A stretch of 64,000 nt of DNA from Macrostomum lignano (taxonomy: Eukaryota). Below the pieces are notes generated by a model. The model was given only the letters and a program-made list of their open reading frames with translations, was not told the origin of the DNA and made no database searches. Shown here one piece after another: positions 41,930-60,760 of the stretch. The first letter of the stretch is position 1. Each line of letters starts with the position of its first letter. A program made the translations under genes and the position numbers. The stretch is from NCBI GenBank assembly GCA_002269645.1, contig NIVC01000305.1:485845-549844 (forward strand). Reading direction: 5' to 3'.

Positions 41930-43640
41930 GACTCTAGATAAATGAGAAAGGGACTATGGAGAGGGAAGATTGATGATAAATGAGAAAGGGACTATAGAGG
42001 CTTTAGATGGATGAGAAACTGACAATAGAGGCTCTAGATGGATAAGAAAGAGACTGTAGAGGCTTTTGAACGATGAGAAACTGACAGTAGAGGCTCTAGA
42101 TGGATGAGAAAATGACAGTAGAGGCTCTAGATGGATGAGAAAATGACAGTAGAGGCTCTAGATGGATAAGCAAGAGACTGTAGAGGCTTTTGAACGATGA
42201 GAAACTGACAGTAGAGGCTCTAGATGGATGAGAAAATGACAGTAGAGGCTCTAGATGGATGAGAAAATGACAGTAGAGGCTCTAGATGGATGAGAAAATG
42301 ACAGTAGAGGCTCTAGATGGATGAGAAAATGACAGTAGAGGCTCTAGATGGATGAGAAAATGACAGTAGAGGCTCTAGATGGATGAGAAAATGACAGTAG
42401 AGGCTCTAGATGGATGAGAAAATGACAGTAGAGGCTCTAGATGGATGAGAAAATGACAGTAGAGGCTCTAGATGGATGAGAAAATGACAGTAGAGGCTCT
42501 AGATGGATGAGAAAATGACAGTAGAGGCTCTAGATGGATGAGAAAATGACAGTAGAGGCTCTAGATGGATGAGAAAATGACAGTAGAGGCTCTAGATGGA
42601 TGAGAAAATGACAGTAGAGGCTCTAGATGGATGAGAAAATGACAGTAGAGGCTCTAGATGGATGAGAAAATGACAGTAGAGGCTCTAGATGGATGAGAAA
42701 ATGACAGTAGAGGCTCTAGATGGATGAGAAAATGACAGTAGAGGCTCTAGATGGATGAGAAAATGACAGTAGAGGCTCTAGATGGATGAGAAAATGACAG
42801 TAGAGGCTCTAGATGGATGAGAAAATGACAGTAGAGGCTCTAGATGGATGAGAAAATGACAGTAGAGGCTCTAGATGGATGAGAAAATGACAGTAGAGGC
42901 TCTAGATGGATGAGAAAATGACAGTAGAGGCTCTAGATGGATGAGAAAATGACAGTAGAGGCTCTAGATGGATGAGAAAATGACAGTAGAGGCTCTAGAT
43001 GGATGAGAAAATGACAGTAGAGGCTCTAGATGGATGAGAAAATGACAGTAGAGGCTCTAGATGGATGAGAAAATGACAGTAGAGGCTCTAGATGGATGAG
43101 AAAATGACAGTAGAGGCTCTAGATGGATGAGAAAATGACAGTAGAGGCTCTAGATGGATGAGAAAATGACAGTAGAGGCTCTAGATGGATGAGAAAATGA
43201 CAGTAGAGGCTCTAGATGGATGAGAAAATGACAGTAGAGGCTCTAGATGGATGAGAAAATGACAGTAGAGGCTCTAGATGGATAAGCAAGAGACTGTAGA
43301 GGCTTTTGAACGATGAGCAACTGACAGTAGAGGCTCTAGATGGATGAGAAACTGACAGTAGAGGCTCTAGATGGATGAGAAACTGACAGTAGAGGCTCTA
43401 GATGGATGAGAAACTGACAGTAGAGGCTCTAGATGGATGAGAAACTGACAGTAGAGGCTCTAGATGGATGAGAAACTGACAGTAGAGGCTCTAGATGGAT
43501 GAGAAACTGACAGTAGAGGCTCTAGATGGATGAGAAAGGGACTACAAAGGCTCTAGATGGATGAGAAACTGACAGTAGAGGCTCTAGATGGATGAGAAAG
43601 AGACTGTAGAGGCTCTAGATGAATAAGAAAGTAACTGTAC
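41930..43640. repeat. Minisatellite, 31-bp unit (TAGATGGATGAGAAAATGACAGTAGAGGCTC)
   Basis: About 55 copies; homogeneous core at ~42200-43270 with degenerate edges. Confidence 0.98.
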
Positions 43641-43771
43641 AGGCTCTGGATGGGTAGGAATCAGGTAATCGACTTCAATTTGTACAGGGCGATAAGAGAA
43701 CCGTGCCTTACTCCTCAATATTATAATGCTCATAAACCGTAATAATAATATTGCGGCCTATTTATTATTGC

Positions 43772-46700
43772 ATGCGCGGCCTCATAAAAGTTACAGCGGC
43801 TACGGCTGCCTCTGCACGCGGTCAGAATAAATTATTTAATCAAATAGGCGCAATTATCTCGATAATCAATAGGCAGCCGATTAAACTTTGCCACTCATCG
43901 CCAATTAGGAGTCAATATGCCAATGCCGATAGTGGCGGGACTGAGGACACTGCCAATTACTGCGGCGGCGAAGATCAAAGGCCAAGGCGAACGGGTCTGG
44001 GGTTGGCCGCCGCCACTGTTGCAGCTGTAACTTTTGGCGGTCTTGTCCTCGCTTTTCGTCGAGTTGTTCAGGCCAAGGAACTGTCTAAAGAGGACGAAAA
44101 TGTAACCAATAATGAGGCTGCCGCTTCGAAGCGAAAGAGGCTGGGCTTTCGCGAGCGTCGAATAATTGCTTACGAGGACCGAATCCGAGCTTACAGCACG
44201 CCAGACAAAATATTTCGCTACTTTGCCACGCTGCAGACTGTTGATTCTGATGGCAACACCACTGTTAGTGATTGGGATTTCTTTTGCTTCTGTTTGAAAA
44301 TCCCACATCCTCGGGTTATTTTGCGTTTCTCGGACTCTCAGGTTTTGGGATTTTCCAGATTCTCAGGTTTTGGGGTTTCCCAGATCCTCAGGTTTTGGGA
44401 TTTCCCAGATCCTAAGGCTTTGGAGTTTCCCAGATTCTCAGGCTCTGGGATTTGCCAGATTCTCAGATTTTGGGATTTCCCAGATTCTCAGGTTTTTGGG
44501 GTTTCCCAGACCTTCATGTTTTAGGATTACCCAGATTTTAGGTTTTAGGATTTCCCAGATTTTAGGTTTTGGGATTTCCCAGATTTTAGGTTTTGGGATT
44601 TTCCAGATTCTCAGGTTTTGGGGTTTCCCAGATTCTCAGGTTTTAGGATTTCCCAGATCTCGGGTTTGGGTTTTCCCAGATCCTCAGGTCTTCTGGGGAT
44701 TTCCCAGATCCTTAGGTTTTGGGAGTTTCCCAGATTCTCAGGCTTTGGGATTTCCCAGATTCTCAGGTTTTCGGATTTCCCAGATTCTCAAGTTTTGGGA
44801 TTTCCCAGATCCTCAGGCTTTGGAGTTTCCCAGATTCTCAGGCTTTGGGATTTCCCAGATTCTCAAGTTTTGGGATTTCCCAGATCCTCAGGTTTGGGGA
44901 TTTCCCAGATCCTCAGGTTTTGGGATTTCCCAGATCCTCAGGTTTTTTGGGTTTTCCAGACCTTCATGTTTTGGGATTTCCCAGATCCCCAGGTTTTAGG
45001 GGTTCCCGAATCCCCAAACTAAGACTTCAAGTCCCTCATGCTCTCACAATCCGTCCCCTCAGATATTCATGACTCCGGCAGATTTTGTTCGCAGCCTGAC
45101 TCCGGGTGTTCGTCAACCGAAGGTCTCGGGCTCGATTCCTTCGAACGCTACGACCCGGCAATTGAGAAGCCGGCTCGCCTGTTCGAACTTCGACCTCGAG
45201 ATTCGGTATTTCGAACTCTCGGCAACGAAGCTTTAATCTCGTTTAGTGACTACATATTCCTACTCACCGTGCTTAGCACTCCGCCCAGGCAATTTGAGAT
45301 TGCTTTTCGCATGTTCGACTCCAATGCGGACGGGAATTTGGATATTGACGACTTTATGCACGTGCAGGTTTGTCTCTGAGAAAACTTTCTTTCTTATCAG
45401 TAGTATAACTAGTAAATTTTGCTATTTTTTGCTGAGATAATTACGAGAATAGAAGTCTTTGAAGTGTCAAACTTGGCTTCAGATGGCGCATAAAATAAAC
45501 TTCAGGTAGCCTATGTATGTACTCGTAGCTTGCGGTATTACCAGCAATAGACTTCAGGTATTACCAGTAATAGACTTCAGGTATTACCAGTAATGAGCTT
45601 CAGGTATTACCAGCAACAGACTTCAGGTATTACCAGTAATAGACTTCAGGTATTACCAGTAATAGACTTCAGGTATTACCAGTAATGAGCTTCAGGTATT
45701 ACCAGTAATGAGCTTCAGGTATTACCAGTAATAGACTTCAGGTATTACTAGTAATGAGCTTCAGGTATTACCAGCAACAGACTTCAGGTATTACCAGTAA
45801 TAGGCTTCAGGTATTACCAGTAATAGGCTTCATGTATTACCAGTAATAGGCTTCAAATATTACCAGTAATAGGCTTCAAATATTACCAGTAATAGGCTTC
45901 AAATATTACCAGTAATAGGCTTCATGTATTACCAAGGATTAACTTGAGGTGTCACTAATAACCAAAAATGTGTTGGTAATTAAACAGGTTTAAGATTGAA
46001 TCTCTGTTAGGGCCTAAAGGAGCCCTGCGCACACCCATAACCCTTGTCTTAATCTTCAGACAATCCTTCGCGACCAGACCAATGTTGGCAAGCGTCACCG
46101 GGATCACAGCGTGACTGGCAGTACGCTGAAACCCGAATTGAACTCCGCCTTGGCGTGTTACTTTTTTGGCCAATCTGGTCATGGATTACTGAGCATTGCT
46201 CGGATGCTGGACTTTCAGGTTGGTGTTCAGTGTGCAGTTCTGTTAGATAGTTGAAATCTAACTGGCTTTAATGCAGCTAGAATTGCACCTCTGATCCCGT
46301 GTATCTACAAGCATTTTTTGATTGCTACGGAATCAGTTGAGTCATGAGTCACATCTCAGTGAGTCATTGATGAGCCACAATTAACTCTTCAGTGGTGAGT
46401 CACCTGGTTCAGTAGTTAGTCACACCTGGGTCAGTAGTGAGTCACATCTGGGTCAGTAGTGAGTCACACCTGGGTCAGTAGTGAGTCACATCTGGGTCAG
46501 TAGTGAGTCACATCTGGGTCAGTAGTGAGTCACACCTGGGTCAGTAGTGAGTCACATCTGGGTCAGTAGTGAGTCACACCTGGGTCAGTAGTGAGTCACA
46601 TCTGACGGATCTGAGTCATTATTGAATCATATCTGATGCAGTGCAATGCATTGTTTCGGTCCCAAGAATGATGTCGAGAATTATGACTCCGATGCGACTA

Positions 46701-48152
46701 TAGCTGTCAAAGAATGATCAGTCATTATTAAAATCATATTGCATAAATCAACCAATCGATTTTATTTCTCGTCCAGGCCCGACTACAACGCGAACTGAAT
46801 CGAATCGAGTTCGATCGCTACCGGCCAGATCAGCGCGACTGCATCACCGAGCTCAGCTTCGCTCGCCTCCTCATCGCTTACGCCGGTTTCCCGGACATTA
46901 AAAAGCGCAGAATGCTGCGCCGCGTTCGAGAGGCATTCGGCTCTGGCGGCGCCAGGGGCATCTCGTTCAAGCAGTACGCCGAGTTCTCCCGCCTGCTGAA
47001 GTCCATCGCTGACGTGGACACCGCGCTCACGTTTCACCACATCTGTGAGCTCGCCTCAGCGTCTCCTTGAGCTTCTCTGCTGCCCTCCCAGATCCTCAGC
47101 TGCCCTCCCAGATCCTCAGCTGCCCTCCCAGATCCTCAGCTGCCCTCCCAGATCCTCAGCTGCTGGGCCAGCCTCCCAGATCCCCAGTTACTGGGCCAGC
47201 CTCCCAGATCCTCAGTTGCTGCTGGGCCAGCCTCCCAGATCCTCAGTTACTGCTGAGCCGGCCTCCCAGATCCTCAGCTGCTGGGCCAGCCTCCCAGATT
47301 CCTCAGTTGCTGCTGAGCCGGCCTCCCAGATCCTCAGCTGCTGGGCCAGCCTCCCAGATCCTCAGCTGCTGGGCCAGCCTCCCAGATTCCTCAGTTGCTG
47401 CTGAGCCGGCCTCCCAGATCCTCAGTAGTTGCTGGGCCAGCCTCCCAGATCCTCAGTAGTTGCTGGGCCAGCCTCCCAGATCCTCAGTAGTTGCTGGGCC
47501 AGCCTCCCAGATCCTCAGTTGCTGCTGGGCCAGCCTCCCAGATCCTCAGTTGCTGGGCCAGCCTCCCAGATCCTTAGTTGCTGCTGGGCCAGCCTCCCAG
47601 ATCCTCAGCTGCTGGGCCAGCCTCCCAGATCCTCAGTTGCTGGGCCAGCCTCCCAGATCCTCAGCTGCTGGGCCAGCCTCCCAGATCCTCAGCTGCTGGG
47701 CCAGCCTCCCAGATCCTCAGCTGCTGGGCCAGCCTTCCAGAGTGTCAGTTGCTGGGCCGGCCTCCCAGATCCTCAGCTGCTGGGCCAGCCTCCCAGATCC
47801 TCAGTAACTTCAATAAGCAATTTTAAACAGACATTTTGATTAAATTTATTCTCATTTTTTCAACTCTAAATGGACAGCTGGCGCCTCCATCGACAAGGCC
47901 ACATTTCGGCACATGGCTGTTACCGTGGCGAGCATCGAGCTGGACAGTCACCTACTGGACGTCGTCTTTGTCCTGTTTGACGAAGACGGCGACGGGTACC
48001 TCAGCAACAAAGAATTCGTATCGGTGATGAAGCACCGGCTGTCTCGCGGTCTGGATAAATCGATGGACACCGGAGCTATTCGAATGCTGTCCGCCCTGAG
48101 CAGCTGTGCTCAGGAGCAGCTGTTCGATTGGATCAGAGGTGGCAATCGTTGA
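43772..48152 (+). CDS. MICU1: Mitochondrial calcium uptake protein 1; exons 43772-44263, 45063-45367, 46060-46218, 46777-47044, 47878-48152
   Basis: YEDRIRAYSTPDKIFRYFATL, IFMTPADFVRSLTP, FRMFDSNADGNLDIDDF, RHRDH...SALACYFFG, LFDEDGDGYLSNKEFVSVMKHRLSRGL. One missing G at ~45119. Confidence 0.95.
44330..45010. repeat. Intronic minisatellite, ~25-bp unit (TTTTGGGATTTCCCAGATTCTCAGG)
   Basis: MICU1 intron 1. Confidence 0.93.
45535..45935. repeat. Intronic minisatellite, 23-bp unit (CTTCAGGTATTACCAGTAATAGA)
   Basis: MICU1 intron 2. Confidence 0.95.
46410..46605. repeat. Intronic minisatellite, 22-bp unit (GTAGTGAGTCACATCTGGGTCA)
   Basis: MICU1 intron 3. Confidence 0.95.
47085..47810. repeat. 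Intronic minisatellite, ~28-bp unit (CCTCCCAGATCCTCAGCTGCTGGGCCAG)
   Basis: MICU1 intron 4. Confidence 0.95.
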
Positions 48153-48659: not shown

Positions 48660-49880
48660 TACTGTCTCCCCGCTTATCTCCTGTCTCCCTCTCTGGTCTC
48701 CTGTCTCCCTCTCTTGTCCCCTGTCTCCCTCTCTTGTCCCCTGTCTCCCTCTCTTGTCCCCTGTCTCCCTCTCTTGTCCCCTGTCTCCCTCTCTTGTCCC
48801 CTGTCTTCCTCTCTTGTCCCATGTCTCCCTCTCTTGTCCCCTGCCTCCCTCTCTTGTCCCCTGTCTCCCTCTCTTGTCCCCTGTCTCCCTCTCTTGTCCC
48901 CTGTCTCCCTCTCTTGTCTCCTGTCTCCCTCTCTTGTCCCCTGTCTCCCTCTCTTGTCCCCTGTCTCCCTCTCTTGTCCCCTGTCTCCCTCTCTTGTCTC
49001 CTGTCTCCCTCTCTTGTCTCCTGTCTCCCTCTCTTGTCCCCTGTCTCCCTCTCTTGTCCCCTGTCTCCCTCTCTTGTCCCCTGTCTCCCTCTCTTGTCCC
49101 CTGTCTTCCTCTCTTGTCCCATGTCTCCCTCTCTTGTCCCCTGTCTCCCTCTCTTGTCCCCTGTCTCCCTCTCTTGTCCCCTGTCTCCCTCTCTTGTCCC
49201 CTGTCTCCCTCTCTTGTCTCCTGTCTCCCTCTCTTGTCCCCTGTCTCCCTCTCTTGTCCCCTGTCTCCCTCTCTTGTCCCCTGTCTCCCTCTCTTGTCTC
49301 CTGTCTCCCTCTCTTGTCCCCTGTCTCCCTCTCTTGTCCCCTGTCTCCCTCTCTTGTCCCCTGTCTCCCTCTCTTGTCTCCTGTCTCCCTCTCTTGTCCC
49401 CTGTCTTCCTCTCTTGTCCCCTGTCTCCCTCTCCTGTCCCCTGTCTCCCTCTCTTGTCCCCTGTCTTCCTCTCTTGTCCCATGTCTCCCTCTCTTGTCCC
49501 CTGCCTCCCTCTCTTGTCCCCTGTCTCCCTCTCTTGTCCCCTGTCTCCCTCTCTTGTCCCCTGTCTCCCTCTCTTGTCTCCTGTCTCCCTCTCTTGTCTC
49601 CTGCCTTGCTCTCTTGTCTCCTGTCTCCCTCTCTTGTCCCCTGTCTCCCTCTCTTGTCCCCTGTCTCCCTCTCTTGTCTCCTGTCTCCCTCTCTTGTCTC
49701 CTGCCTTGCTCTCTTGTCTCCTGTCTCCCTCTCTTGTCTCCTGCCTTGCTCTCTTGTCCCAGCCTTCCTCTCTTGTCTCCTGTCTCCATTTCTTATCTCC
49801 TGTCTCCCTCACTAGTCTCCTGCCTTCCTCTGGTCTTCTGCCTCCATCTCTTGTCCCCTGTCTCCCTCTCTTATCTCATG
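48660..49880. repeat. Pyrimidine-rich minisatellite, 20-bp unit (CCCCTGTCTCCCTCTCTTGT)
   Basis: About 60 copies; almost no A on the + strand. Confidence 0.98.
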
Positions 49881-51271
49881 TCTCCCTCTCTTGTCTCCTC
49901 CTCCCTCTCACGTTTAATGTGAGTTGTTATTGCTTGTTTCTAAATTTATTGTCTCAATTCTGTCTGTCCGTGTCATTATGTTTTATCTCTCCACCTAACC
50001 TAATCAGCAGTTAGGACCTGGCCTTATCTTATTTTTCCTACGCGTCAGGTTTTTTCCAGTCAAAGCAAAATAGAAGTACTTTTTGAATTGATTGGGTAGC
50101 TACAGACGGCCAAAGCTAATAAAGTTTTTTTGTATCTGGCCAAGGACTATCTACCTAGCCTACTAAATAGTCTTTATAATCAAACAGGGTATTATCTAAT
50201 CTAGTAAGGAAATTTTCCATCAGCGTTAGCTTTATGTTGTCAACTCAGTGCGGTGACAATTAGTCTTTCACTAGCAAGAAGGGCAGTCAGTCAGTCACTT
50301 CACTTAAGGAGCGATTTTAATCTCCAGTCTAGTTGTTATCTGTTTATTACGAGCTACACACGCGTGTCACTTGAGGGGTGGGGGTGCCATTGCAATTTTA
50401 ATTTGAGGCTGTTATCACCTCGGTGCCACTCGCAGCTGTGTTTCAAATCAAAACAGGTCCTCGCGGTTAAGGTTAACTTAGTAAAAGAGAGAAAAAAGTA
50501 CAAAACTAGTTTTCTATATCTAGTGGACTTTTACAAGTTTGAAAGTTTTTATGTACAGTATCGGTAAATCATATAACTCTGTCCCACTGACTGGGTTTAT
50601 AACTTAATATTTTGGTCTCCGCATGCATTTGATGCGTGAGCGAGACGTGAACATGAATGGTATAAGCTAGCTAGCTAAGCTAAGTAGATAAGAGAAAATA
50701 AGATCTGGTCGTACTCGTTTTATGTAATCGATTTAAAATCACGCAGTTAGCACGCCAGTCCCGAGGGTTGAAGCCAAGCCACGCAGAATAGGAATGATTG
50801 ATGTGTACATAAACAAGTGAAAAACCCATTGCCGCCAAAACACGCAACCGAGCCTAAACGCAAGAATGACGAAATTCCCAGAATTTTACACTAGGATAGC
50901 ATGTGCCACGCAGCCATAGCGTGACCTTCACGCGTGCGCGACTGGACGGGGTTTCTATTTCTAGGTCATTTCAAAACCCCTGTCTACTTGTAGGGGGATT
51001 CCCGTTTTTAGTCTGTTTCTAAATATAGCACACGATGCCACGCACAGCCCACGCCGCCGGCCACCCCTCTGCTGCGTGCTTGTTTCCTTAAGCCAAGTCA
51101 GTCAGTCTGTAGGTATTGGCCTTGGTTAGCGTCTGCCTACTCCCCTTGGATTGGGCACAGTAAAAGGAGTATATAAATCACACTTGAGACCCTTGCGTTC
51201 CTTCCAAATAGATCAAGCGAAGTCAGGTCTGTCGTCAGTTTGTCAGTAAAATATAGAAACACATCATTTCG

Positions 51272-54200
51272 ATGCATCTCACTAGCGGTATTATAGCCGT
51301 GGCGCCTTTGGTTCACGCTAATGATGAAGGATCGACTGCTGTTGCTCCGTCGCCTTCGCATTATCGCCTTCTGAGCTCTACTAAACTTGCTCAGCCAAAG
51401 AAGAATGTCCTTGATAAAACACCGGAAAAATCTTCTAAGCCTTCGAATTCTACATCAAGTAGCGCCGCTGCGTCAACCGTTATTGAACGTTCTCGACCGA
51501 AGCGTCGTCATAGGCGTTCAAATTCGTTCGATTCGGTGTCTACTTTGAGTCGTCGGTCCTATCTAAACATCGATTTGAGGAGTCGTGCAAAATCGATTGT
51601 GAAATCGTCTGCCCTAGCCAATGCTGTTGGTATAGTTGGTAGGCAGTTGCTAGCGTGGCTGAAATGCGACTGGGAGCAGCAAAGCGTACCGGAAGATCAA
51701 GATGGGTTAGTTGGCCTAATTAAAATGTAGTCTGTTGTTGCTAATGAAGCAAGTCCTACCCAGCAATCAGCATTGCTGTATTACATCTTTTAAAACCTAG
51801 GACAAATCACTAGTTACCTGTGTCCGAATTCAGGATGCCAAATTTAAAACCAGGGTGCCAGAGGTATCTACTGTCTCATCTTAGGTGGTAGCTACTGTCT
51901 CTCAGATGGTAGCTACTGTCTCTTAGATGGTAGCTACATAATCTACTGTCTCTCAGATGGTAGCTACTGTCTCTTAGGTGGCATCTACTGTCTCTCAGAT
52001 GGTATCTACATAATCTACTGTCTCTCAGATGGTAGCTACTGTCTCTTAGGTGGCATCTACACTCTACAGTCTCTCAGATGGTATCTACAGTCTCAGGTGG
52101 TATCTACTGTCTCTCAGGTGGTATCTACTGTTTCTCAGGTGGTATCTACTGTCTCTCAGGTGGTATCTACTGTCTCTCAGGTGGTATCTACAGTCTCTCA
52201 GGTGGTATCTACTGTCTCTCAGGTGGTATCTACTGTCTCTCAGGTGGTATCTACAGTCTCTCAGGTGGTATCTACTGTCTCTTAGGTGGCATCTACACTC
52301 TACAGTCTCTCAGGTGGTATCTACAGTCTCAGGTGGTATCTACTGTCTCAGGTGGTATCTACTGTCTCTCAGGTGGAATCTACTGTCTCTTAGGTGGCAT
52401 CTACACTCTACAGTCTCTCAGGTGGTATCTAAAGTCTCAGGTGGTATCTACTGTCTCTCAGGTGGTATCTACTGTTTCTCAGGTGGTATCTACTGTCTCT
52501 TCAGGTGGTATCTACAGTCTCTCAGGTGGTATCTACAGTCTCTCAGGTGGTATCTACTGTCTCTTAGGTGGCATCTACACTCTACAGTCTCTCAGATGGT
52601 ATCTACAGTCTCAGGTGGTATCTACTGTCTCTCAGGTGGTATCTACTGTTTCTCAGGTGGTATCTACTGTCTCTCAGGTGGTATCTACTGTCTCTCAGGT
52701 GGTATCTACAGTCTCTCAGGTGGTATCTACTGTCTCTCAGGTGGTATCTACTGTCTCTCAGGTGGTATCTACAGTCTCTCAGGTGGTATCTACTGTCTCT
52801 TAGGTGGCATCTACACTCTACAGTCTCTCAGGTGGTATCTACAGTCTCAGGTGGTATCTACTGTCTCAGGTGGTATCTACTGTCTCTCAGGTGGAATCTA
52901 CTGTCTCTTAGGTGGCATCTACACTCTACAGTCTCTCAGGTGGTATCTACAGTCTCAGGTGGTATCTACTGTCTCAGTTGGTATCTACTGTCTCTCAGGT
53001 GGTATCTACTGTCTCTCAGGTGGTATCTACTGTCTCAGGTGGTATCTACTCTCTCAGGTGGTATCTTTTGTCTCAAGTATCAAATCTAGGACCTAGGTTA
53101 CAGGCTAATTAAGATAATGCTCTAATTTCCTTTACTTATCTTAAAATTATAATTCGATTTTATAATCTGTACAAAAATCCAAAGACCTGGGCTTGCTTTT
53201 AATTTACATGCTTAAACAACCTTAAATGAAATCTTAAATTAAATCCCATTAATTGAATATCAACATACTCAATAGTTCACCTGACGCATCTCTTCCCTGC
53301 TGGAAATGCTTCCAGGCGTCGGCAGATCCACAGTCCAGCAGACAGTCTGCTAAGTCGGCCAGGCCAATTAGGCCAAAGCAGAGGCGCTTTCAGAGGCCTA
53401 CTAAGCCCATTGCTAATCCTTCTATCGATGTGCATCGCTCGCTGTCTGTTAGAGTCCCATCTAAGATACGGCCCTCTGGCTGGAAATCCTCTTAGCTGCC
53501 TGGCTGTTGGAGGCGGTCCAGCCTGCATTGCCGGCCTGGTCTGCGTTGCTTTTGCCGCTCTGAATGCGTCTGCTTTTGCCGCTTCTTCTGGCTATCGGAG
53601 GCTCGGAGTGGCCAGCAGTGCCTGTCTGCTTCTGGTGGCTCCCGCTTGCATTGTGCTGTGGTCTAGGCCTTCGCCCAGTGAGTATTTCCTATTATCTTTA
53701 AACTTGGGTTGAGTAGTGTGTTATGAGCAGCCTTGAATACCTTGATTTAAAGCTTTTTTGAAATACTTCTCTGTACCCTTAAAACCCTGGTGTGTTAATG
53801 TACCCCATATAAAACCCAGGTGTGTTAATGCACTCCATAAACTCAGGTGTAATATAACCCTCCGTCTCGCTATTCCCGCTTCAACAGTTGTCGGCTTCGC
53901 AGGAATATCAATCAGTGTGGCTCTGTTCCTCAAGCTGACCAATTTGCACCTGCAGCGTCAGCGCATTGCTAGGCAACTCGTTGAACTTCGGGTTGTCAGT
54001 GTCAACAGAATGCTACTAATTAGCTTTGCTCAACTAGCAGGACTATTAGTTGCTATAGTGGCTCTGACTCAACAGTGGTTAATGCCTTCTCTAGCTGCCG
54101 CCTCATCTGATCCAGCTGCTAATAGCTACGAGTACAATGCGCCCTGCTGGCTGGTGATGGTTGAGAGGCAACTGCGCCTGTCGCCTCCTGTTATTGCCGT

Positions 54201-54862
54201 CTGCTTGGCTGCAGGAGCGGCAATGGATCGGATTCTGAAACTGATGGATTGCTGCTTTCAGTCTGGCAGTGACTTTGTAAGTGCTATTTCTTTATTTTTA
54301 GCTTTTCATTGTTCGTTTCTAAGTTTAGTGTAAGCTTTTAAGATTTTTAGGAATCACCCTTTGAAGTTATTTAGGAATCGCCCTTTGAAGTTATTTAGGA
54401 ATCGTCTTTAAAAGTTGCTTGGGAAATGCCTTTCCATGCCAATCATTGTAACGCAAGAATTCCACAAAAAGAAACATAAGAAATCATTTTTCACCAAAAA
54501 AATATTTTCAGCAGCAGAAACCCTCAGCTGAGGACACTACTATCAGTAGCAAACTAACTCAAACCAAGCGACTCTGGTGGAATGCTTCAAGCCTGACCAA
54601 CCTGCTGAAGTCTGTGTGGCCATCCGCAGCGGAATTCAATCTGCCTAGTCTAGCCTGGGCTCTCCTGGCCCAGCTGGTTGTGTCCGCAGTGCTTCGATCG
54701 CCCCAGCCGTGGCCTCTGCTCACTGTGGCCATCGTGCTGCCCATTCTGGATGCCGCCTGCGTCAGATTCGGCAACAATGCCTTCGTTTGGCTCTGCCTTG
54801 TGCTTGGCCTGCCAGTGCTAGCTAGACTGGGCTATGCTGACTACTGTCAGTACTATCTTTGA
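51272..54862 (+). CDS. Divergent DGAT1-like MBOAT protein, catalytic His replaced by Ala; exons 51272-51705, 53316-53677, 53888-54276, 54512-54862 (511 aa, frame intact)
   Basis: IHSPADSLLS...FRGLL...ARCLLESHLRYG, LFLKL, QQWLMP, ER-LRLSPP, WWNASSLT and GNNAFVWLCLVLGLP parallel DGAT1 motifs in order. All splice phases match (2, 1, 0). Confidence 0.8.
51860..53075. repeat. Intronic minisatellite, 21-bp unit (CTCAGGTGGTATCTACTGTCT) with higher-order blocks
   Basis: DGAT1-like intron 1. Confidence 0.96.
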
Positions 54863-55189
54863 CATTAAACTGACGTTTTCTGTGTAGATATTTGCAACGA
54901 TTGACATTATATTAGCAATATAATTTTCTGTTGTTAACTCTTTAATTTTTGTTGATTAAAATTCTATAAATAAACAATTCTGTTGGGGGCAATAAACATT
55001 TATTTTGTTTTCCTATCCATATAGACTTTCTGTATACTTTTTTGTACTATTATTATGTCTTGGATTCTAAAATGAAAGTCCATGTTAGATTTCAGGAGAG
55101 AATAGATTTGAGGGAGATTGAGTGAGTCTAGAGATGACTGTGATTAGGGAAGGTAATAGAAATGAATTGAGACTGAGTTGGAGATTAGA

Positions 55190-56620
55190 AATGGCTGGGA
55201 TTCTGAGAGAATTGAGATTAATTAAGATTAAAAGCTAGAGATGGCTGTGATTGGGGGAGAGAACAGAGTTAAATAAGATTAAAGGGGATTAGAGATGGCT
55301 GTGATTGGGGGAGAGAACAGAGTTAAATAAGATTAAAGGGGATTAGAGATGGCTGGGATTGGGGTAGAACAGAGATAAATGAGATTAAAGGGGATTAGAG
55401 ATGGCTGGGATTGGGGTAGAACAGAGATAAATGAGATTAAAGGGGATTAGAGATGGCTGGGATTGGGGTAGAACAGAGATAAATGAGATTAAAGGGGATT
55501 AGAGATGGCTGGGATTGGGGTAGAACAGAGATAAATGAGATTAAAGGGGATTAGAGATGGCTGGGATTGGGGTAGAACAGAGATAAATGAGATTAAGGGG
55601 GATTAGAGATGGCTGTGATTGGGGTAGAGAACAGAGATAAATGAGATTAAAGGGGATTAGAGGTGGCTGTGATTGGGGGAGAGAACAGAGATAAATGAGA
55701 TTAGAGATGGCTGTGATTGGGGGAGAGAACAGAGATAAATGAGATTAAAGGGGATTAGAGATGGCTGTGGTTGGGGTAGAGAACAGAGATAAATGAGATT
55801 AAAGGGGATTAGAGATGGCTGGGATTGGGGTAGAGAACATAGCTAAATGAGATTAAAGGGGATTAGAGATGGCTGTGATTGGGGTAGAGAACAGAGATAA
55901 ATGAGATTAAAGGGGATTAGAGATGGCTGGGATTGGGGTAGAGAACAGAGATAAATGAGATTAAAGGGGATTAGAGATGGCTGTGATTGGGGTAGAGAAC
56001 AGAGATAAATGAGATTAAAGGGGATTAGAGATGGCTGTGGTTGGGGTAGAGAACAGAGATAAATGAGATTAAAGGGGATTAGAGATGGCTGTGGTTGGGG
56101 TAGAGAACAGAGATAAATGAGATTGAGGGGGATTAGAGATGGCTGTGATTGGGGTAGAGAACAGAGATAAATGAGATTAAAGGGGATTAGAGATGGCTGT
56201 GGTTGGGGTAGAGAACAGAGATAAATGAGATTAAAGGGGATTAGAGGTGGCTGTGATTGGGGGAGAGAACAGAGATAAATGAGATTAGAGATGGCTGTGA
56301 TTGGGGGAGAGAACAGAGATAAATGGGATTGAGGGGGATTAGAGATGGCTGTGATTGGGGCAGAGAACAGAGATAAATGGGATTGAGGGGGATTAGAGAT
56401 GGCTGTGATTGGGGGAGAGAACAGAGATATATGAGATTGAGGGGGATTAGAGATGGCTGTGGTTGGGGAGAGAACAGAGATAAATGGGATTGAGGGGGAT
56501 TAGAGATGGCTGTGATTGGGGCAGAGAACAGAGATAAATGGGATTGAGGGGATTAGAGATGGCTGTGATTGGGGGAGAGAACAGATAAATGAGATTAAGG
56601 GGGTTTAGAGATGGCAGGGA
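55190..56620. repeat. Purine-rich minisatellite, ~54-bp unit (GAGATTAAAGGGGATTAGAGATGGCTGTGATTGGGGTAGAGAACAGAGATAAAT)
   Basis: About 26 copies between the DGAT1-like gene and SIRT6. Confidence 0.96.
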
Positions 56621-56699
56621 TTTTTTAGAGAGAATAGAGATGATTAGGGTCCATAACGTTATAGAAAAACAGTCGGTACGGCAACACACCAACAGCTCA

Positions 56700-56720
56700 T
56701 CTCCTTCCTCCCACCTCCAG
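56700..56720 (+). promoter_or_regulatory. 3' splice acceptor, probable spliced-leader trans-splice site supplying the SIRT6 start codon
   Basis: Pyrimidine tract CTCCTTCCTCCCACCTCCAG directly followed by TCG GCT AAC TAC (S-A-N-Y), i.e. SIRT6 residue 2 onward. Confidence 0.7.
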
Positions 56721-58091
56721 TCGGCTAACTACTCGGCCGGGCTGTCCGAATACTCGGACAAAGGCACTCTGGGCCTGCCCGAAACTCACGAGTCCCAAGC
56801 CGATTGGGAGTTGAAAGCTCGTCAGCTGGTGGACCTGATTCGACAGCCCGGAGCTCGAGTCGTTGTCCACACGGGAGCCGGCGTCAGCACCTCGGCCGGA
56901 ATCCCGGATTTCCGCGGCCCCAACGGCGTCTGGACTCTAGAACGCGAAGGTCGAACAGTTGAAGCCGGGGCCAAGTTTGAAGAGGCTCAGCCAACACTTA
57001 CTCACGCCGCTCTGGTTGCCTTGGAAACGGCCGGATTCGTTCACTACCTGGTGACGCAGAATGTTGACGGTTTGCACCTTCGGTCTGGATTTCCTCGCAA
57101 TCGGTTGTCGATTTTGCATGGCGATATGTTTGTTGAGCGGTGCGCCCGGTGCGGCTTGCACCGGGCGAGAGACCAACCGGTGGAGACGGTCGGTCAGAAA
57201 GCCACCGGGAGGCGGTGCGGAGCTCCGGCTAGGCGAGGCAGAAAGAAATCCGTCAAAGCCGGTGGCGATGCTGGTGACAGTGTTGACGGCATCTGCGGCG
57301 GCCAGATGCTGGACACGGTGCTAGACTGGGAGCATCAGCTGCCTCAGGTAGATCTTCGTCGAGCTCGCGAGCATTCCAGTCGGGCTACCGTTAATCTGAC
57401 TCTGGGCACCAGTTTGCAGATTGTTCCGGCCGCCGATCTGCCCACAATGGGCGGCAAATTAGTCATTATTAATCTGCAGCCTACAAAGAAAGATGCTCAG
57501 AGTTATCTGCGTATAAATGCTCGTTGCGATCTTGTCATGGCGTTGGTCTGTAGAGAACTGCTCGGCATTGATGCCGAAGAGATGCTGAGGCCGTTGCTTC
57601 GCCTGCAACCGTTGAGACTGTTTTCTAAGCATACGCGAAAGAGTGAACGGTTTCCATGGCGATTCGCCGAGTCTGATCAGAATCAAAAAATCGATAGAGA
57701 AGCTCAAAAAGAAGCTAAATGCGAGATTCCAAGTACAGAACGCACTTTGGAAAGTTCAAAATGCACTTCGGAAAGTGCACATTGTACTTCGAAAAGTACA
57801 GAACGCACTTTGGAACGCATTTCTGAAAGTACAGAACGCACTTTGGAAAGTTCAAAATGCACTTCGGAAAGTGCACATTGTACTTCGGAAAGTACAGAGC
57901 GCACTTTGGAACGCATTTCTGAAAGTACAGAGCGCACTTTGGAAAGTGCTCAACGCACCTCGTCGGAGAGTTCAAATCAAAGTATCAAAATCAAAGATGA
58001 AGTTGTCACCGATATGAAAAAGAAACTTGAACATTCGAGCGCAGATGAGTCTAACTCTGCCACCGCGACTAAACGTTCAAAGCTTGCTTAG
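56721..58091 (+). CDS. SIRT6: NAD-dependent deacylase sirtuin-6, single exon, with repetitive C-terminal tail
   Basis: SANYSAGLSEYSDKGTLGLPE, HTGAGVSTSAGIPDFRGPNGVWT, TQNVDGLH, LHGDMF, LDTVLDWE, LGTSLQI, INLQPTKKD. Confidence 0.95.
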   Translation, partial: SANYSAGLSEYSDKGTLGLPETHESQADWELKARQLVDLIRQPGARVVVHTGAGVSTSAGIPDFRGPNGVWTLEREGRTVEAGAKFEEAQPTLTHAALVALETAGFVHYLVTQNVDGLHLRSGFPRNRLSILHGDMFVERCARCGLHRARDQPVETVGQKATGRRCGAPARRGRKKSVKAGGDAGDSVDGICGGQMLDTVLDWEHQLPQVDLRRAREHSSRATVNLTLGTSLQIVPAADLPTMGGKLVIINLQPTKKDAQSYLRINARCDLVMALVCRELLGIDAEEMLRPLLRLQPLRLFSKHTRKSERFPWRFAESDQNQKIDREAQKEAKCEIPSTERTLESSKCTSESAHCTSKSTERTLERISESTERTLESSKCTSESAHCTSESTERTLERISESTERTLESAQRTSSESSNQSIKIKDEVVTDMKKKLEHSSADESNSATATKRSKLA

Positions 58092-58619: not shown

Positions 58620-60760
58620 TACTAATATAGATACATCACATCATCTAGATACAATACAACACTACGCCATAGATACAGCATCACCATCTAGATACAATAC
58701 AACACTACGCCATAGATACAGCATCACCATCTAGATACAACACAACACTACGCCATAGATATAGCATCACCATCTAGATACAATACCACACTACGCCATA
58801 GATACAGCATCACCATCTAGATACAACACCACGCCATAGATACAGCATCACCATCTAGATACAATATAACATTACGCCATAGATACAGCATCACCATCTA
58901 GATACAATATAACACTACGCCATAGATACAGCATCACCATCTAGATACAATATAACACTACGCCATAGATACAGCATCACCATCTAGATACAACACCACG
59001 CCATAGATACAGCATCACCATCTAGATACAATATAACACCACGCCATAGATACAGCATCACCATCTAGATACAACACCACGCCATAGATACAGCATCACC
59101 ATCTAGATACAATATAACACCACGCCATAGATACAGCATCACCATCTAGATACAACACAACACTACGCCATAGATATAGCATCACCATCTAGATACAATA
59201 CCACACTACGCCATAGATACAGCATCACCATCTAGATACAACACCACGCCATAGATACAGCATCACCATCTAGATACAATATAACACTACGCCATAGATA
59301 CAGCATCACCATCTAGATACAATACAACACTACGCCATAGATACAGCATCACCATCTAGATACAACACAACACTACGCCATAGATACAGCATCACCATCT
59401 AGATACAATACCACACTACGCCATAGATACAGCATCACCATCTAGATACAACACCACGCCATAGATACAGCATCACCATCTAGATACAATATAACACTAC
59501 GCCATAGATACAGCATCACCATCTAGATACAATATAACACTACGCCATAGATACAGCATCACCATCTAGATACAATACAACACTACGCCATAGATACAGC
59601 ATCACCATCTAGATACAATATAACACTACGCCATAGATACAGCATCACCATCTAGATACAACACCACGCCATAAATACAGCATCACCATCTAGATACAAT
59701 ATAACACTACGCCATAGATACAGCATCACCATCTAGATACAATACAACACTACGCCATAGATACAGCATCACCATCTAGATACAATATAACACTACGCCA
59801 TAGATACAGCATCACCATCTAGATACAATACAACACTACGCCATAGATACAGCATCATCATCTAGATACAATATAACACTACGCCATAGATACAGCATCA
59901 CCATCTAGATACAACACCACGCCATAGATACAGCATCACCATCTAGATACAACACCACGCCATAGATACAGCATCACCATCTAGATACAATACAACACCA
60001 CGCCATAGATACAGCATCACCATCTAGATACAACACCACGCCATAGATACAGCATCACCATCTAGATACAACACCACGCCATAGATACAGCATCACCATC
60101 TAGATACAATATAACACTACGCCATAGATACAGCATCACCATCTAGATACAACACCACGCCATAGATACAGCATCACCATCTAGATACAATATAACACTA
60201 CGCCATAGATACAGCATCACCATCTAGATACAATACAACACTACGCCATAGATACAGCATCACCATCTAGATACAATATAACACTACGCCATAGATACAG
60301 CATCACCATCTAGATACAATACAACACTACGCCATAGATACAGCATCATCATCTAGATACAATATAACACTACGCCATAGATACAGCATCACCATCTAGA
60401 TACAACACCACGCCATAGATACAGCATCACCATCTAGATACAACACCACGCCATAGATACAGCATCACCATCTAGATACAATACAACACCACGCCATAGA
60501 TACAGCATCACCATCTAGATACAACACCACGCCATAGATACAGCATCACCATCTAGATACAATATAACACTACGCCATAGATACAGCATCACCATCTAAA
60601 TACAATACCACACCATAGATACAGCATCACCATCTAGATACAACACCACACCATAGATACAGCATCACCATCTAGATACAACACCACACTACGCCATAGA
60701 TACAGCATCACCATCTAGATACAACACCACGCCATAAATACACCACCACCCCATAGATGC
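58620..60760. repeat. Minisatellite, 38/43-bp variant units (GCCATAGATACAGCATCACCATCTAGATACAA[TATA]ACAC[T/C]AC)
   Basis: About 50 copies with a constant core and a few recurring tail variants. Confidence 0.97.

What the first reader, a model, noticed from the sequence alone, without database searches (positions are those of the whole stretch)
51272..54862. Intact DGAT1 paralog with the catalytic His replaced: candidate MBOAT pseudoenzyme
Seen: four exons splice in frame to 511 aa without stops. LAWALLAQLVVSAVLRSPQPW aligns ungapped to human DGAT1 [21 protein letters not shown], so the His415 equivalent is Ala (GCC, 54668-54670). FYRDWWN is reduced to KRLWWN, the Asn378 region reads LLKSVWP, and ~25 aa after it plus the APTLCYELNFPR block are missing. 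Established: His415 is essential for DGAT1 acyl transfer, and DGAT1 oligomerises. Inference: a catalytically dead regulator, scaffold or lipid sensor retained in a housekeeping cluster, with a long Ser/Arg-rich N-terminal tail.
Basis: partly seen in the sequence, partly recalled or inferred. Interest (0 to 1): 0.76.

Follow-up and report, generated by a model that had tools for sequence, protein, structure and literature searches.

The report
Catalytically dead DGAT1 copy in flatworm
This flatworm (Macrostomum lignano) gene is an extremely diverged duplicate of the fat-making enzyme DGAT1 that has lost the parts needed for catalysis but still looks like a maintained, transcribed membrane-protein gene, making it a rare candidate non-enzyme descendant of this enzyme family.

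Summary
The window is Macrostomum lignano (G000:C305). Exons 51272-51705, 53316-53677, 53888-54276 and 54512-54862 (+) join through GT-AG sites into a stop-free 511-codon frame. Pfam and PDB sequence searches find nothing. DGAT1 ancestry is nevertheless solid:
- Two colinear BLASTP matches to the species' own DGAT1 (E 2.5e-6 and 5e-4).
- Smith-Waterman z = 14.
- hhalign probability 97.8%, E 7e-13, over 322 columns.
- One intron at the identical residue and phase, and another within three codons in the same phase.

His415 is Ala (GCC 54668-54670, the same in all four genomic copies) and Glu416 is Gln. Gln465 is Leu, the acyl-CoA tunnel segment and the whole APTLCYELNFPR loop are deleted, and FYxDWWN is reduced to WWN. 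Acyl transfer by the MBOAT mechanism is therefore excluded.

A canonical DGAT1 with the His exists elsewhere (C1141, C4070). The gene looks maintained:
- 0 stops in frame against 18-33 in the other five frames.
- No exon indels between copies, while intron lengths change up to fourfold.
- Nonsynonymous divergence below noncoding divergence (p = 0.0045).
- RNA-seq-based NCBI models at three syntenic loci.

- Asn378 is probably kept (FNLP).
- The real exon-4 acceptor is probably 54515.
- Exon 1 is not in any RNA-based model.

No ortholog was found outside this species, and the function is untested.

The parts
51170..51177 (+). TATA-like box (TATATAAA) about 95 nt upstream of the first ATG
   Evidence: Read directly from the sequence. 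It is unchanged in the C3194 and C1474 copies. There is no ATG between it and 51272.
51272..51705 (+). Putative exon 1. It encodes a 145-residue Ser/Arg/Lys-rich low-complexity N-terminus. Donor is GG|GTTAGT, phase 2.
   Evidence: It joins exon 2 in frame. It is not part of the three RNA-based NCBI models. UniProt ab initio models join it to acceptor 53466 instead. It shows no significant similarity to the DGAT1 N-terminus.
51706..53315 (+). Intron 1 (phase 2). It holds a 21-nt tandem array at 51863-53074.
   Evidence: Canonical M. lignano DGAT1 intron 1 has the same phase and lies within three codons of this position.
53316..53677 (+). Exon 2. It covers the DGAT1 N-terminal docking segment (H-x3-DSL-x-S...RG), TM1 (FRGLL...LILL...R..LE...YG), TM2 and TM3.
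   Evidence: BLASTP residues 151-296 against DGAT1 65-222, E 5e-4. hhalign. The RNA-based models begin at 53326-53341.
53326..53326 (+). Possible spliced-leader trans-splice acceptor (GGCAG|ATC). The spliced leader ends in ATG and would start M-IHSPADS in frame.
   Evidence: Idea only. Protein PAA46109 starts exactly at this codon. The spliced-leader sequence comes from PMC8629364.
53678..53887 (+). Intron 2 (phase 1)
   Evidence: It lies at the homologous residue (P|I against P|F after the PxP motif) and in the same phase as canonical DGAT1 intron 2. It is 905 nt long in the C1474 copy.
53888..54276 (+). Exon 3. It covers TM4 (LFLKL), the site of the IL1 deletion, TM5 (LTQQWLMP), ERQLRL, and a degenerate TM6.
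   Evidence: Canonical intron 3 is absent here.
54277..54514 (+). Intron 3 (phase 0). It has no counterpart in canonical M. lignano DGAT1. The acceptor is NAGNAG (54512/54515/54518).
   Evidence: RNA-based models use 54515. The intron is 911 nt long in the C1474 copy.
54515..54862 (+). Exon 4. It covers the polar replacement of TM6/IL2, then WWN, FNLP, a truncated TM7, TM8, TM9, and the TGA stop at 54860-54862.
   Evidence: BLASTP residues 305-506 against DGAT1 301-504, E 2.5e-6. The exon encodes no His.
54575..54583 (+). WWN, the only surviving part of FYxDWWN (the motif reads TKRLWWN)
54668..54673 (+). GCC CAG = Ala448-Gln449, at the position of catalytic His415-Glu416
   Evidence: The codons are identical in all copies.
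54969..54996 (+). Two AATAAA polyadenylation signals, 107 and 129 nt after the stop codon

Best explanation
The locus is a Macrostomum-lineage duplicate of the DGAT1 gene, made by DNA-level duplication because introns are shared. It has diverged to about 26-28% identity with DGAT1. It has lost the His-Glu catalytic pair, Gln465, His382, the Ser411/Tyr390/Lys400 acyl-CoA tunnel segment, the aromatic acyl pocket, and the whole cytosolic loop IL1. It therefore cannot make triacylglycerol by the MBOAT mechanism (shown by sequence; activity not assayed).

It is still a maintained, transcribed gene. It encodes a polytopic, presumably ER, membrane protein with about nine hydrophobic segments in DGAT1 order.

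What it keeps best are the N-terminal docking segment, TM1, the QQWxxP helix, WWN and TM9. In human DGAT1, the N-terminal segment, TM1 and TM9 build the domain-swapped dimer, and FYxDWWN contacts the partner's N-terminus. My preferred mechanism, which is inferred and not shown, is a non-catalytic partner. It would pair with itself or with active DGAT1 by inserting its N-terminus and TM1 into the partner. This would modulate or sequester DGAT1, by analogy with HHATL, which lacks the catalytic His and is proposed to dampen HHAT-driven palmitoylation.
For: Homology:
- BLASTP E 2.5e-6 and 5e-4, colinear, with Smith-Waterman z = 14.
- hhalign probability 97.8%, E 7e-13, 322 columns spanning query 1-357.
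- The SOAT-like protein gives only z = 2.
- Intron 2 is at the identical residue and phase. Intron 1 has the same phase within three codons.

Loss of catalysis:
- H415A, E416Q, Q465L and H382L.
- S411, Y390 and K400 deleted.
- W334C, F337A, F338I, F342M, F373L and W374L.
- 0 of 16 invariant IL1 columns kept and 10 of 33 core columns kept.
- H415A and E416L each abolish human DGAT1 activity (10.1101/2020.01.06.896332).

Maintenance:
- 0 stops in frame against 18-33 in the other five frames.
- All copies are intact with zero exon indels, while introns 2 and 3 differ fourfold in length.
- dN 0.011 against noncoding 0.027, Fisher p = 0.0045.
- Exon identity of 98.6% lies within the range of the neighbouring genes' exons (97.7-99.6%), and synteny is kept.
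- NCBI models at three loci come from a genome-guided RNA-seq assembly.

Retention pattern: DGAT1-invariant columns kept are 8 of 13 in the N-terminus/TM1, 8 of 12 around TM5, and 8 of 15 in TM8-TM9.

Fold: an AlphaFold2 model built with a 122-sequence alignment has human DGAT1 as its three best PDB matches (E about 3e-5, TM 0.48-0.50), followed by plant DGAT1, ACAT2 and ACAT1.
Against: - dN/dS between copies is 0.57 and not significantly below 1 (13 nonsynonymous to 8 synonymous changes, p = 0.15).
- No ortholog was found in 1.84 billion representative proteins, so long-term constraint is inferred only from the open frame.
- The AlphaFold2 models have low confidence (pLDDT 61-62). The 25-sequence alignment gave no DGAT1 match. 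The better model rests on an alignment made of DGAT1 sequences.
- IL1 and TM6, which in human DGAT1 receive the partner's N-terminus and TM1, are deleted or degenerate. Any heterodimer would therefore be asymmetric.
- The retained regions are also simply the most conserved non-catalytic parts of DGAT1, and the regional grouping is post hoc.
- Expression level, tissue and the true 5' end are unknown. The gene ID was not found in the supplements of four M. lignano papers.
Confidence: 0.62

Rival explanations
1. It is a transcribed relic. The duplicate lost its function and is drifting. The open frame and splice sites persist only because the last inactivating step is recent, or because transcription and splicing are tolerated.
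For: - dN/dS of 0.57 is not significantly below 1.
- The amino-acid composition is skewed: Ala 13.7% against 6.0% in DGAT1, and Phe 3.0% against 7.5%.
- The branch length is saturated in the tree.
- Two functional blocks are deleted and one TM helix is replaced by polar sequence.
- Pfam does not recognise the protein.
- No ortholog is known.
Against: - The divergence from DGAT1 is near saturation, yet 511 codons, or 365 in the homologous part, are free of stops (chance about 5e-7).
- Three GT-AG introns are intact in all copies.
- There are no exon indels, while the introns gained or lost hundreds of bases.
- dN is below the noncoding rate (p = 0.0045).
- The hydrophobic-segment pattern and 36 of 97 invariant DGAT1 positions survive.
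Confidence: 0.2
2. It is a neofunctionalised active protein. The DGAT1 scaffold would have been re-used for another activity, such as a lipid transporter or scramblase, a channel, or an acyltransferase with different catalytic residues, rather than as a non-catalytic partner.
For: - The Asn378 equivalent, WWN, QQWxxP and the GxP kink of TM9 are retained.
- About nine hydrophobic segments could still enclose a membrane cavity.
- The frame is maintained.
Against: - There is no His anywhere in residues 287-511, and Glu416 and Gln465 are also lost.
- The acyl-CoA entrance and tunnel are deleted.
- No precedent and no supporting motif were found.
Confidence: 0.12
3. The resemblance to DGAT1 is chance similarity between hydrophobic membrane proteins, or the gene model is an artefact of stitching open frames together.
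For: Pfam MBOAT and PDB phmmer give no hit even at E = 10. Searches of the genome with PF03062 and with human DGAT1 do not hit this contig.
Against: - Colinear full-length hhalign match, E 7e-13.
- Smith-Waterman z = 14 against composition-preserving shuffles.
- Shared intron position and phase.
- The independent RNA-based NCBI models use the same exon 2-3-4 junctions.
Confidence: 0.02

Closest known systems
DGAT1 (acyl-CoA:diacylglycerol O-acyltransferase 1; DGAT1/ACAT branch of the MBOAT superfamily). Examples: human DGAT1 (PDB 6VP0) and M. lignano BOX15_Mlig000493g7.
   Same: - It descends from DGAT1.
- The order of segments is colinear from the His69-equivalent to the C-terminal DYY.
- It keeps the H-x3-DSL-x-S...RG N-terminal segment, TM1, LFLKL, QQWxxP, ER-L-L, WWN, NxP, LR...W, GN..VW..L..G.P and DY.
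- It shares two intron positions with the species' own DGAT1.
- It has about nine hydrophobic segments.
   Different: - His415 is Ala, Glu416 is Gln, Gln465 is Leu and His382 is Leu.
- A 27-28-residue deletion removes Ser411, Tyr390 and Lys400.
- IL1, including APTLCYELNFPR, is deleted.
- TM6 is replaced by polar sequence.
- FYxD of FYxDWWN is lost.
- Identity is only about 26-28%.
- The Pfam MBOAT model does not detect it.
HHATL (hedgehog acyltransferase-like, mammalian Gup1)
   Same: It is an MBOAT-family paralog in which the invariant catalytic His is replaced (by Leu in HHATL). It is thought not to act as an acyltransferase, and is proposed to be a negative regulator of its active paralog's reaction (PMC5831804).
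   Different: HHATL derives from the HHAT/Gup1 branch, not from DGAT1. It keeps the homologous regions around the lost His and is conserved across mammals. The flatworm protein has also lost whole structural blocks and is so far known from one species only.
SOAT/ACAT (sterol O-acyltransferases)
   Same: They are the sister enzymes of DGAT1 and rank below DGAT1 among the structural matches of the model. M. lignano has SOAT-like genes of its own.
   Different: There is no significant direct similarity (Smith-Waterman z = 2, best BLASTP E 0.02 over 13 residues). The DGAT1-specific N-terminal and QQW motifs point to DGAT1, not SOAT.

Membership tests
MBOAT superfamily (as an enzyme family) | Match to the Pfam MBOAT model PF03062 above its cut-off | tested here: not met
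   hmmscan at E <= 10 returned 0 families. A PF03062 search of the whole genome returned 56 hits, none on contig C305.
MBOAT superfamily (as an enzyme family) | Invariant catalytic His in a hydrophobic helix (His415 of human DGAT1) | tested here: not met
   Ala448 (GCC 54668-54670) lies opposite the His in hhalign and in two MAFFT alignments. There is no His in residues 287-511. The codon is the same in all four copies.
MBOAT superfamily (as an enzyme family) | Conserved Asn/Asp/His 30-50 residues upstream of the catalytic His (Asn378) | tested here: inconclusive
N438 in FNLPSLAW aligns with Asn378 of WNIPVHKW in three alignments. After the deletion, the spacing to position 448 is only 10 residues.
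DGAT1 (by descent) | Significant full-length sequence similarity to DGAT1, stronger than to other MBOATs | tested here: met
   BLASTP E 2.5e-6 and 5e-4, z = 14. hhalign E 7e-13 over 322 columns. The SOAT-like protein gives z = 2.
DGAT1 (by descent) | Gene structure shared with the species' own DGAT1 | tested here: met
   Intron 2 is at the identical aligned residue, phase 1. Intron 1 is phase 2 and within three codons. Canonical introns 3 and 4 are absent, and the window gene has one intron of its own.
DGAT1 (as an enzyme) | SxxxHEY, FYxDWWN, the APTLCYELNFPR/IL1 block, and the acyl-CoA tunnel residues | tested here: not met
   SxxxHEY reads -...AQL. FYxDWWN reads TKRLWWN. IL1 keeps 0 of 16 invariant columns. 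Y390, K400 and S411 are deleted, H382 is Leu and Q465 is Leu.
DGAT1 (as an enzyme) | DGAT1/MBOAT fold | tested here: inconclusive
   With a 25-sequence alignment, AlphaFold2 gave pLDDT 61 and pTM 0.39, with no DGAT1 match. With a 122-sequence alignment it gave pLDDT 62 and pTM 0.50, and the top matches were human DGAT1 at TM 0.48-0.50. The alignment consisted of DGAT1 sequences.
DGAT1 (as an enzyme) | Acyl-CoA:diacylglycerol acyltransferase activity | not testable with these tools
   This needs a TAG-deficient yeast complementation test or a microsomal assay.
Pseudoenzyme (maintained dead paralog, HHATL-like) | An active paralog is present in the same genome | tested here: met
   Canonical DGAT1 lies at C1141 and C4070, with fragments on C2568 and C1140, and carries [19 protein letters not shown]. 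It is annotated as BOX15_Mlig000493g7.
Pseudoenzyme (maintained dead paralog, HHATL-like) | Purifying selection on the dead copy | tested here: inconclusive
   dN/dS is 0.57, p = 0.15. dN is below the noncoding rate, p = 0.0045. There are no exon indels and the frame is intact. No cross-species orthologs are available.
Pseudoenzyme (maintained dead paralog, HHATL-like) | Expression as a spliced mRNA or a protein | tested here: inconclusive
   This is indirect. Three NCBI proteins with the exon 2-3-4 junctions come from an annotation built from RNA-seq. No reads or expression values could be inspected.
Pseudoenzyme (maintained dead paralog, HHATL-like) | Physical or functional interaction with the active paralog | not testable with these tools
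   This needs co-immunoprecipitation, co-expression assays or a multimer prediction.

The most novel reading that the evidence does not exclude
A DGAT1-derived non-catalytic subunit that forms an asymmetric, domain-swapped heterodimer with active DGAT1. It would donate its N-terminal segment and TM1 but be unable to receive the partner's. It would thereby tune triacylglycerol synthesis or lipid-droplet formation in Macrostomum. This would be the first dead-subunit regulator of a neutral-lipid-synthesising MBOAT.
Probability: 0.15. Interest if true: 0.72.

Novelty: new variant of a known kind. Interest (0 to 1): 0.48.

Why it matters
A 2016 review called HHATL the only MBOAT-family member found so far without the invariant catalytic His (PMC5831804). 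My literature searches found no description of a dead DGAT1 paralog.

Here the scaffold of a central fat-storage enzyme has been stripped of the catalytic pair, the acyl-CoA tunnel and a whole cytosolic loop. It still keeps an open, spliced, transcribed frame and the elements that build the DGAT1 dimer.

If it is functional, it would show how a polytopic enzyme can be turned into a non-catalytic membrane protein. It would also offer a natural tool for probing the role of DGAT1 dimerisation. M. lignano has transgenesis and RNAi, so this can be tested.

The case also shows that database annotations miss such genes. This one is labelled 'hypothetical protein', 'Transmembrane protein', or, spuriously, 'GPI ethanolamine phosphate transferase 3', because family HMMs are centred on the catalytic core. 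The limits are that it is known from a single species, has no measured expression and has no functional data.

Tried and rejected
- Pfam hmmscan at E <= 10 and phmmer against PDB chains returned nothing. Homology became visible only with pairwise BLASTP against the species' own DGAT1 and with a profile.
- Whole-genome searches with PF03062 and with human DGAT1 did not hit contig C305.
- phmmer of the 362-residue NCBI protein against 1.84 billion representatives found only itself. The word-indexed search found only M. lignano entries. No cross-species dN/dS was therefore possible.
- An ML tree with 24 DGAT1 sequences and a SOAT outgroup saturated the branch at 10 changes per site and joined the protein to the outgroup by long-branch attraction. 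It cannot date the duplication.
- AlphaFold2 with a 25-sequence alignment gave a model with no meaningful structural match.
- Exon 1 against the DGAT1 N-terminus was not significant (z = 1.3), so homology of the tail is rejected as unsupported.
- SOAT ancestry is rejected.
- The canonical DGAT1 copies were too similar to each other (0.3% divergence) to serve as a dN/dS baseline, and the small contigs carry 1-nt gaps.
- The gene IDs Mlig015824 and Mlig030436 were absent from the full-text library and from the held supplements of PMC5730564, PMC5816591, PMC7336406 and PMC12896417.
- Rfam and tRNA scans of the window were empty.
- An early count of 12 nonsynonymous to 9 synonymous changes was wrong. 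The corrected count is 13 to 8.
Full report
**Origin and gene model.** The window is contig C305:485845-549844 of a 764-Mb assembly. Identical proteins in public databases identify the organism as the flatworm Macrostomum lignano. On the + strand, segments 51272-51705, 53316-53677, 53888-54276 and 54512-54862 are bounded by good GT-AG sites. They join into a 511-codon frame ending in TGA. A TATA-like box sits at 51170 with no earlier ATG, and two AATAAA signals follow the stop. The frame has no stop, whereas the other five frames of the same spliced sequence have 18-33. From base composition, 365 stop-free codons have a chance of about 5e-7. Intron 1 carries a 1.2-kb array of a 21-nt unit.

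**What the databases hold.** NCBI has three 'hypothetical, partial' proteins:
- PAA46109/PAA85778 for this locus and its identical twin on C5049.
- PAA52722 for C3194.
- PAA67568 for C1474.

They follow exactly the exon 2-3-4 junctions, but all use acceptor 54515 (DFQKPS). They start 10-25 nt into exon 2, at IHSPADS, HSPADS or DSLLS. This annotation was built from a genome-guided RNA-seq assembly that is cut at trans-splice and poly(A) sites (PMC5730564). I take that as indirect evidence that exons 2-4 are transcribed and spliced.

Exon 1 appears only in two UniProt ab initio models. These join it to another acceptor (53466, giving ...EDQDG-YGPLAG). The C1474 copy has lost the AG before 54512 (TTTCAA), which agrees with 54515 being the real acceptor.

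The M. lignano spliced leader ends in ATG (PMC8629364). Trans-splicing at GGCAG|ATC (53326) would therefore give M-IHSPADS in frame. That protein would begin exactly where the similarity to DGAT1 begins. This is an idea, not a result.

**Is it DGAT1-related?** Family and structure-sequence libraries say nothing:
- Pfam at E <= 10 returns no family.
- PDB chains at E <= 10 return no hit.
- Whole-genome searches with PF03062 or with human DGAT1 do not touch this contig.

I checked my recalled human DGAT1 sequence against PDB 6VP0 and it is identical over 488 residues. I then rebuilt the canonical M. lignano DGAT1 from C1141. The rebuilt protein is 100% identical to NCBI BOX15_Mlig000493g7.

Against that protein, the window protein gives two colinear BLASTP matches: residues 305-506 against 301-504 (E 2.5e-6) and 151-296 against 65-222 (E 5e-4). 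The Smith-Waterman score lies 14 standard deviations above 1000 shuffles. Values for human DGAT1 are similar. A 24-sequence DGAT1 profile aligns with 322 columns of the protein, query 1-357 against profile 49-473 of 489, at probability 97.8% and E 7e-13. The M. lignano SOAT-like protein gives only z = 2.

Gene structure agrees:
- Intron 2 interrupts the homologous codon after the P-x-P motif, in phase 1, in both genes.
- Intron 1 is phase 2 in both genes and lies within three codons.
- Canonical introns 3 and 4 are missing, and the window gene has one intron of its own.

The gene is therefore a DNA-level duplicate of DGAT1, now at about 26-28% identity.

**What is lost.** All three alignments put LLAQ opposite FFHE. 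His415 is Ala448 (GCC 54668-54670) and Glu416 is Gln. The other changes are:
- Gln465 to Leu, with the Pro466 kink kept.
- His382 to Leu.
- Ser411, Tyr390 and Lys400 fall in a 27-28-residue deletion.
- The aromatic acyl pocket becomes small aliphatic residues or Cys (W334C, F337A, F338I, F342M, F373L, W374L).
- FYxDWWN reads TKRLWWN.
- IL1 with APTLCYELNFPR is gone.
- TM6 is replaced by polar sequence.

In human DGAT1, H415A and E416L each abolish activity, and W377, N378, H382 and S411 mutants lose more than 80% (10.1101/2020.01.06.896332).

There is no His in residues 287-511. The three His of the homologous part lie before TM1, at the end of TM1, and after TM4. The codon is identical in all four assembled copies, so a base-call error is excluded.

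**What is kept.** Of 97 columns invariant in 24 DGAT1 sequences, 36 survive:

| Region | Invariant columns kept |
|---|---|
| N-terminal segment, TM1 and EL1 | 8 of 13 |
| TM2-TM4 | 2 of 8 |
| IL1 | 0 of 16 |
| QQWxxP/TM5 region | 8 of 12 |
| TM6-IL2-TM7 core | 10 of 33 |
| TM8-TM9 and C-terminus | 8 of 15 |

A hydropathy scan finds about nine hydrophobic segments in DGAT1 order. AlphaFold2 gave low-confidence models. With 25 aligned sequences nothing matched. With 122 sequences (pLDDT 62, pTM 0.50) the three best PDB matches were human DGAT1 (E about 3e-5, TM 0.48-0.50), followed by plant DGAT1, ACAT2 and ACAT1. This is weak and partly circular support, because the alignment consisted of DGAT1 sequences.

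**Is it maintained?** The genome holds four copies: the window, an identical one on C5049, C3194 (4 differences) and C1474 (21 differences). The copies sit in the same block, zinc finger - EF-hand - this gene - SIR2, so they are homeologous or allelic blocks of this neopolyploid and redundant assembly.

All copies keep the frame and the splice sites. Exon lengths are identical, while intron 2 is 210 against 905 nt and intron 3 is 235 against 911 nt. The aligned noncoding sequence has 28 gap positions.

Window against C1474:
- 13 nonsynonymous and 8 synonymous changes.
- dN 0.0114, dS 0.0202, dN/dS 0.57. This is not significantly below 1 (p = 0.15).
- dN is lower than the noncoding rate of 0.0274 (Fisher p = 0.0045).
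- Exon identity of 98.6% lies inside the range of the neighbouring genes' exons, 97.7-99.6%.

The strongest argument is the open frame itself at near-saturated divergence. A neutrally drifting copy would have been broken long ago. No ortholog outside M. lignano was found, and a tree was useless because of the branch length. The age of the duplication and the long-term omega therefore remain unknown.

**Interpretation.** I conclude, with about 0.6 confidence for the whole statement, that this is a maintained, transcribed, catalytically dead descendant of DGAT1.

How it works is inference. In human DGAT1, TM1 crosses over to pack on TM6 and TM9 of the partner. Residues 64-80 dock on the partner's IL1 and IL2, and FYxDWWN touches the partner's N-terminus. 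The flatworm protein keeps its own N-terminal segment, TM1, WWN and TM9, but has lost IL1 and TM6. It could therefore donate to a partner but hardly receive from one. This suggests an asymmetric complex with active DGAT1, or a self-complex, with a modulatory or sequestering role. The comparison is HHATL, in which the catalytic His is Leu and which is proposed to dampen HHAT-driven palmitoylation (PMC5831804).

Rivals:
- A drifting transcribed relic (0.2).
- A scaffold re-used for another activity (0.12).
- Chance resemblance (0.02).

**Verdict.**
- The core of the interpretation, a dead DGAT1 paralog alongside an active DGAT1, is supported.
- 'Retained pseudoenzyme' is favoured but not proven.
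- The proposed roles, the 'housekeeping cluster' and the N-terminal tail are not supported by evidence.
- It is a new variant of a known kind, an MBOAT without the catalytic His. It is of moderate interest, limited by single-species distribution and by the absence of expression and functional data.

Noticed in passing
window 43000-43653, 44336-44997, 45534-45934, 46389-46604, 47144-47805, 48662-49909, 51863-53074, 55236-56622, 58627-59998: There are nine long tandem arrays with units of 19-54 nt (up to 210 nt) in 17 kb, mostly in introns and intergenic DNA. The introns of canonical DGAT1 on C1141 hold similar arrays. Array length accounts for much of the intron-size difference between copies.
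   Followed up: partly
window 54505-54520; L038 (C1474 copy): The exon-4 acceptor is a triple NAGNAG (CAG|CAG|CAG at 54512, 54515 and 54518). The C1474 copy has CAA at the first position.
   Followed up: yes
window 53316-53346: The 5' ends of all three RNA-based NCBI models fall 10-25 nt inside exon 2, among a cluster of AG dinucleotides. The M. lignano spliced leader ends in ATG, and at 53326 it would be in frame. This suggests a trans-spliced isoform of about 363 residues without exon 1.
   Followed up: partly
UniRef100_A0A1I8G4D6 and A0A1I8GF47 (same gene, earlier assembly): One ab initio model of this gene is named 'GPI ethanolamine phosphate transferase 3'. I found no domain or similarity that supports this name. 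The other model contains a frame-shifted internal segment (LPPHLIQLLIATSTMRP), which comes from an alternative predicted intron.
   Followed up: partly
window 56589-58091 (+), repeat at 57731-57947: The downstream neighbour is a SIR2-family gene read as a single 500-codon open frame. Its C-terminal part contains an in-frame 96-nt tandem repeat (ESTERTLERIS...).
   Followed up: no
G000 contigs C493, C2730, C2729, C4183, C3352, C215, C421 and others (L008-L012): The PF03062 search gave 56 hits in the genome. They include a multi-copy set of open frames of about 350-360 residues that keep a His (for example SFAFVSIYHG in L008). This looks like an expanded MBOAT subfamily of unknown type.
   Followed up: no
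G000:C2568 and C1140 (L015, L021, L022): Short contigs carry canonical DGAT1 exons with single-base gaps relative to C1141. These are either assembly indel errors or decaying extra copies.
   Followed up: no
G000:C5049:2500-7500 (L039): A 28-kb contig carries a copy of the gene with all four exons 100% identical to the window. This is probably assembly redundancy rather than a separate locus.
   Followed up: partly
G000:C67:986840-987918 and C2092:177341-178078 (L026): This is a third DGAT1/ACAT-like locus, besides the intronless 547-residue SOAT-like gene on C1310, C27 and C938. It carries YFLFAPTLVYRDAYPQ, FGDRQFYRDWWN and SSLFHEY. One search hit reports a TGA inside the frame.
   Followed up: no
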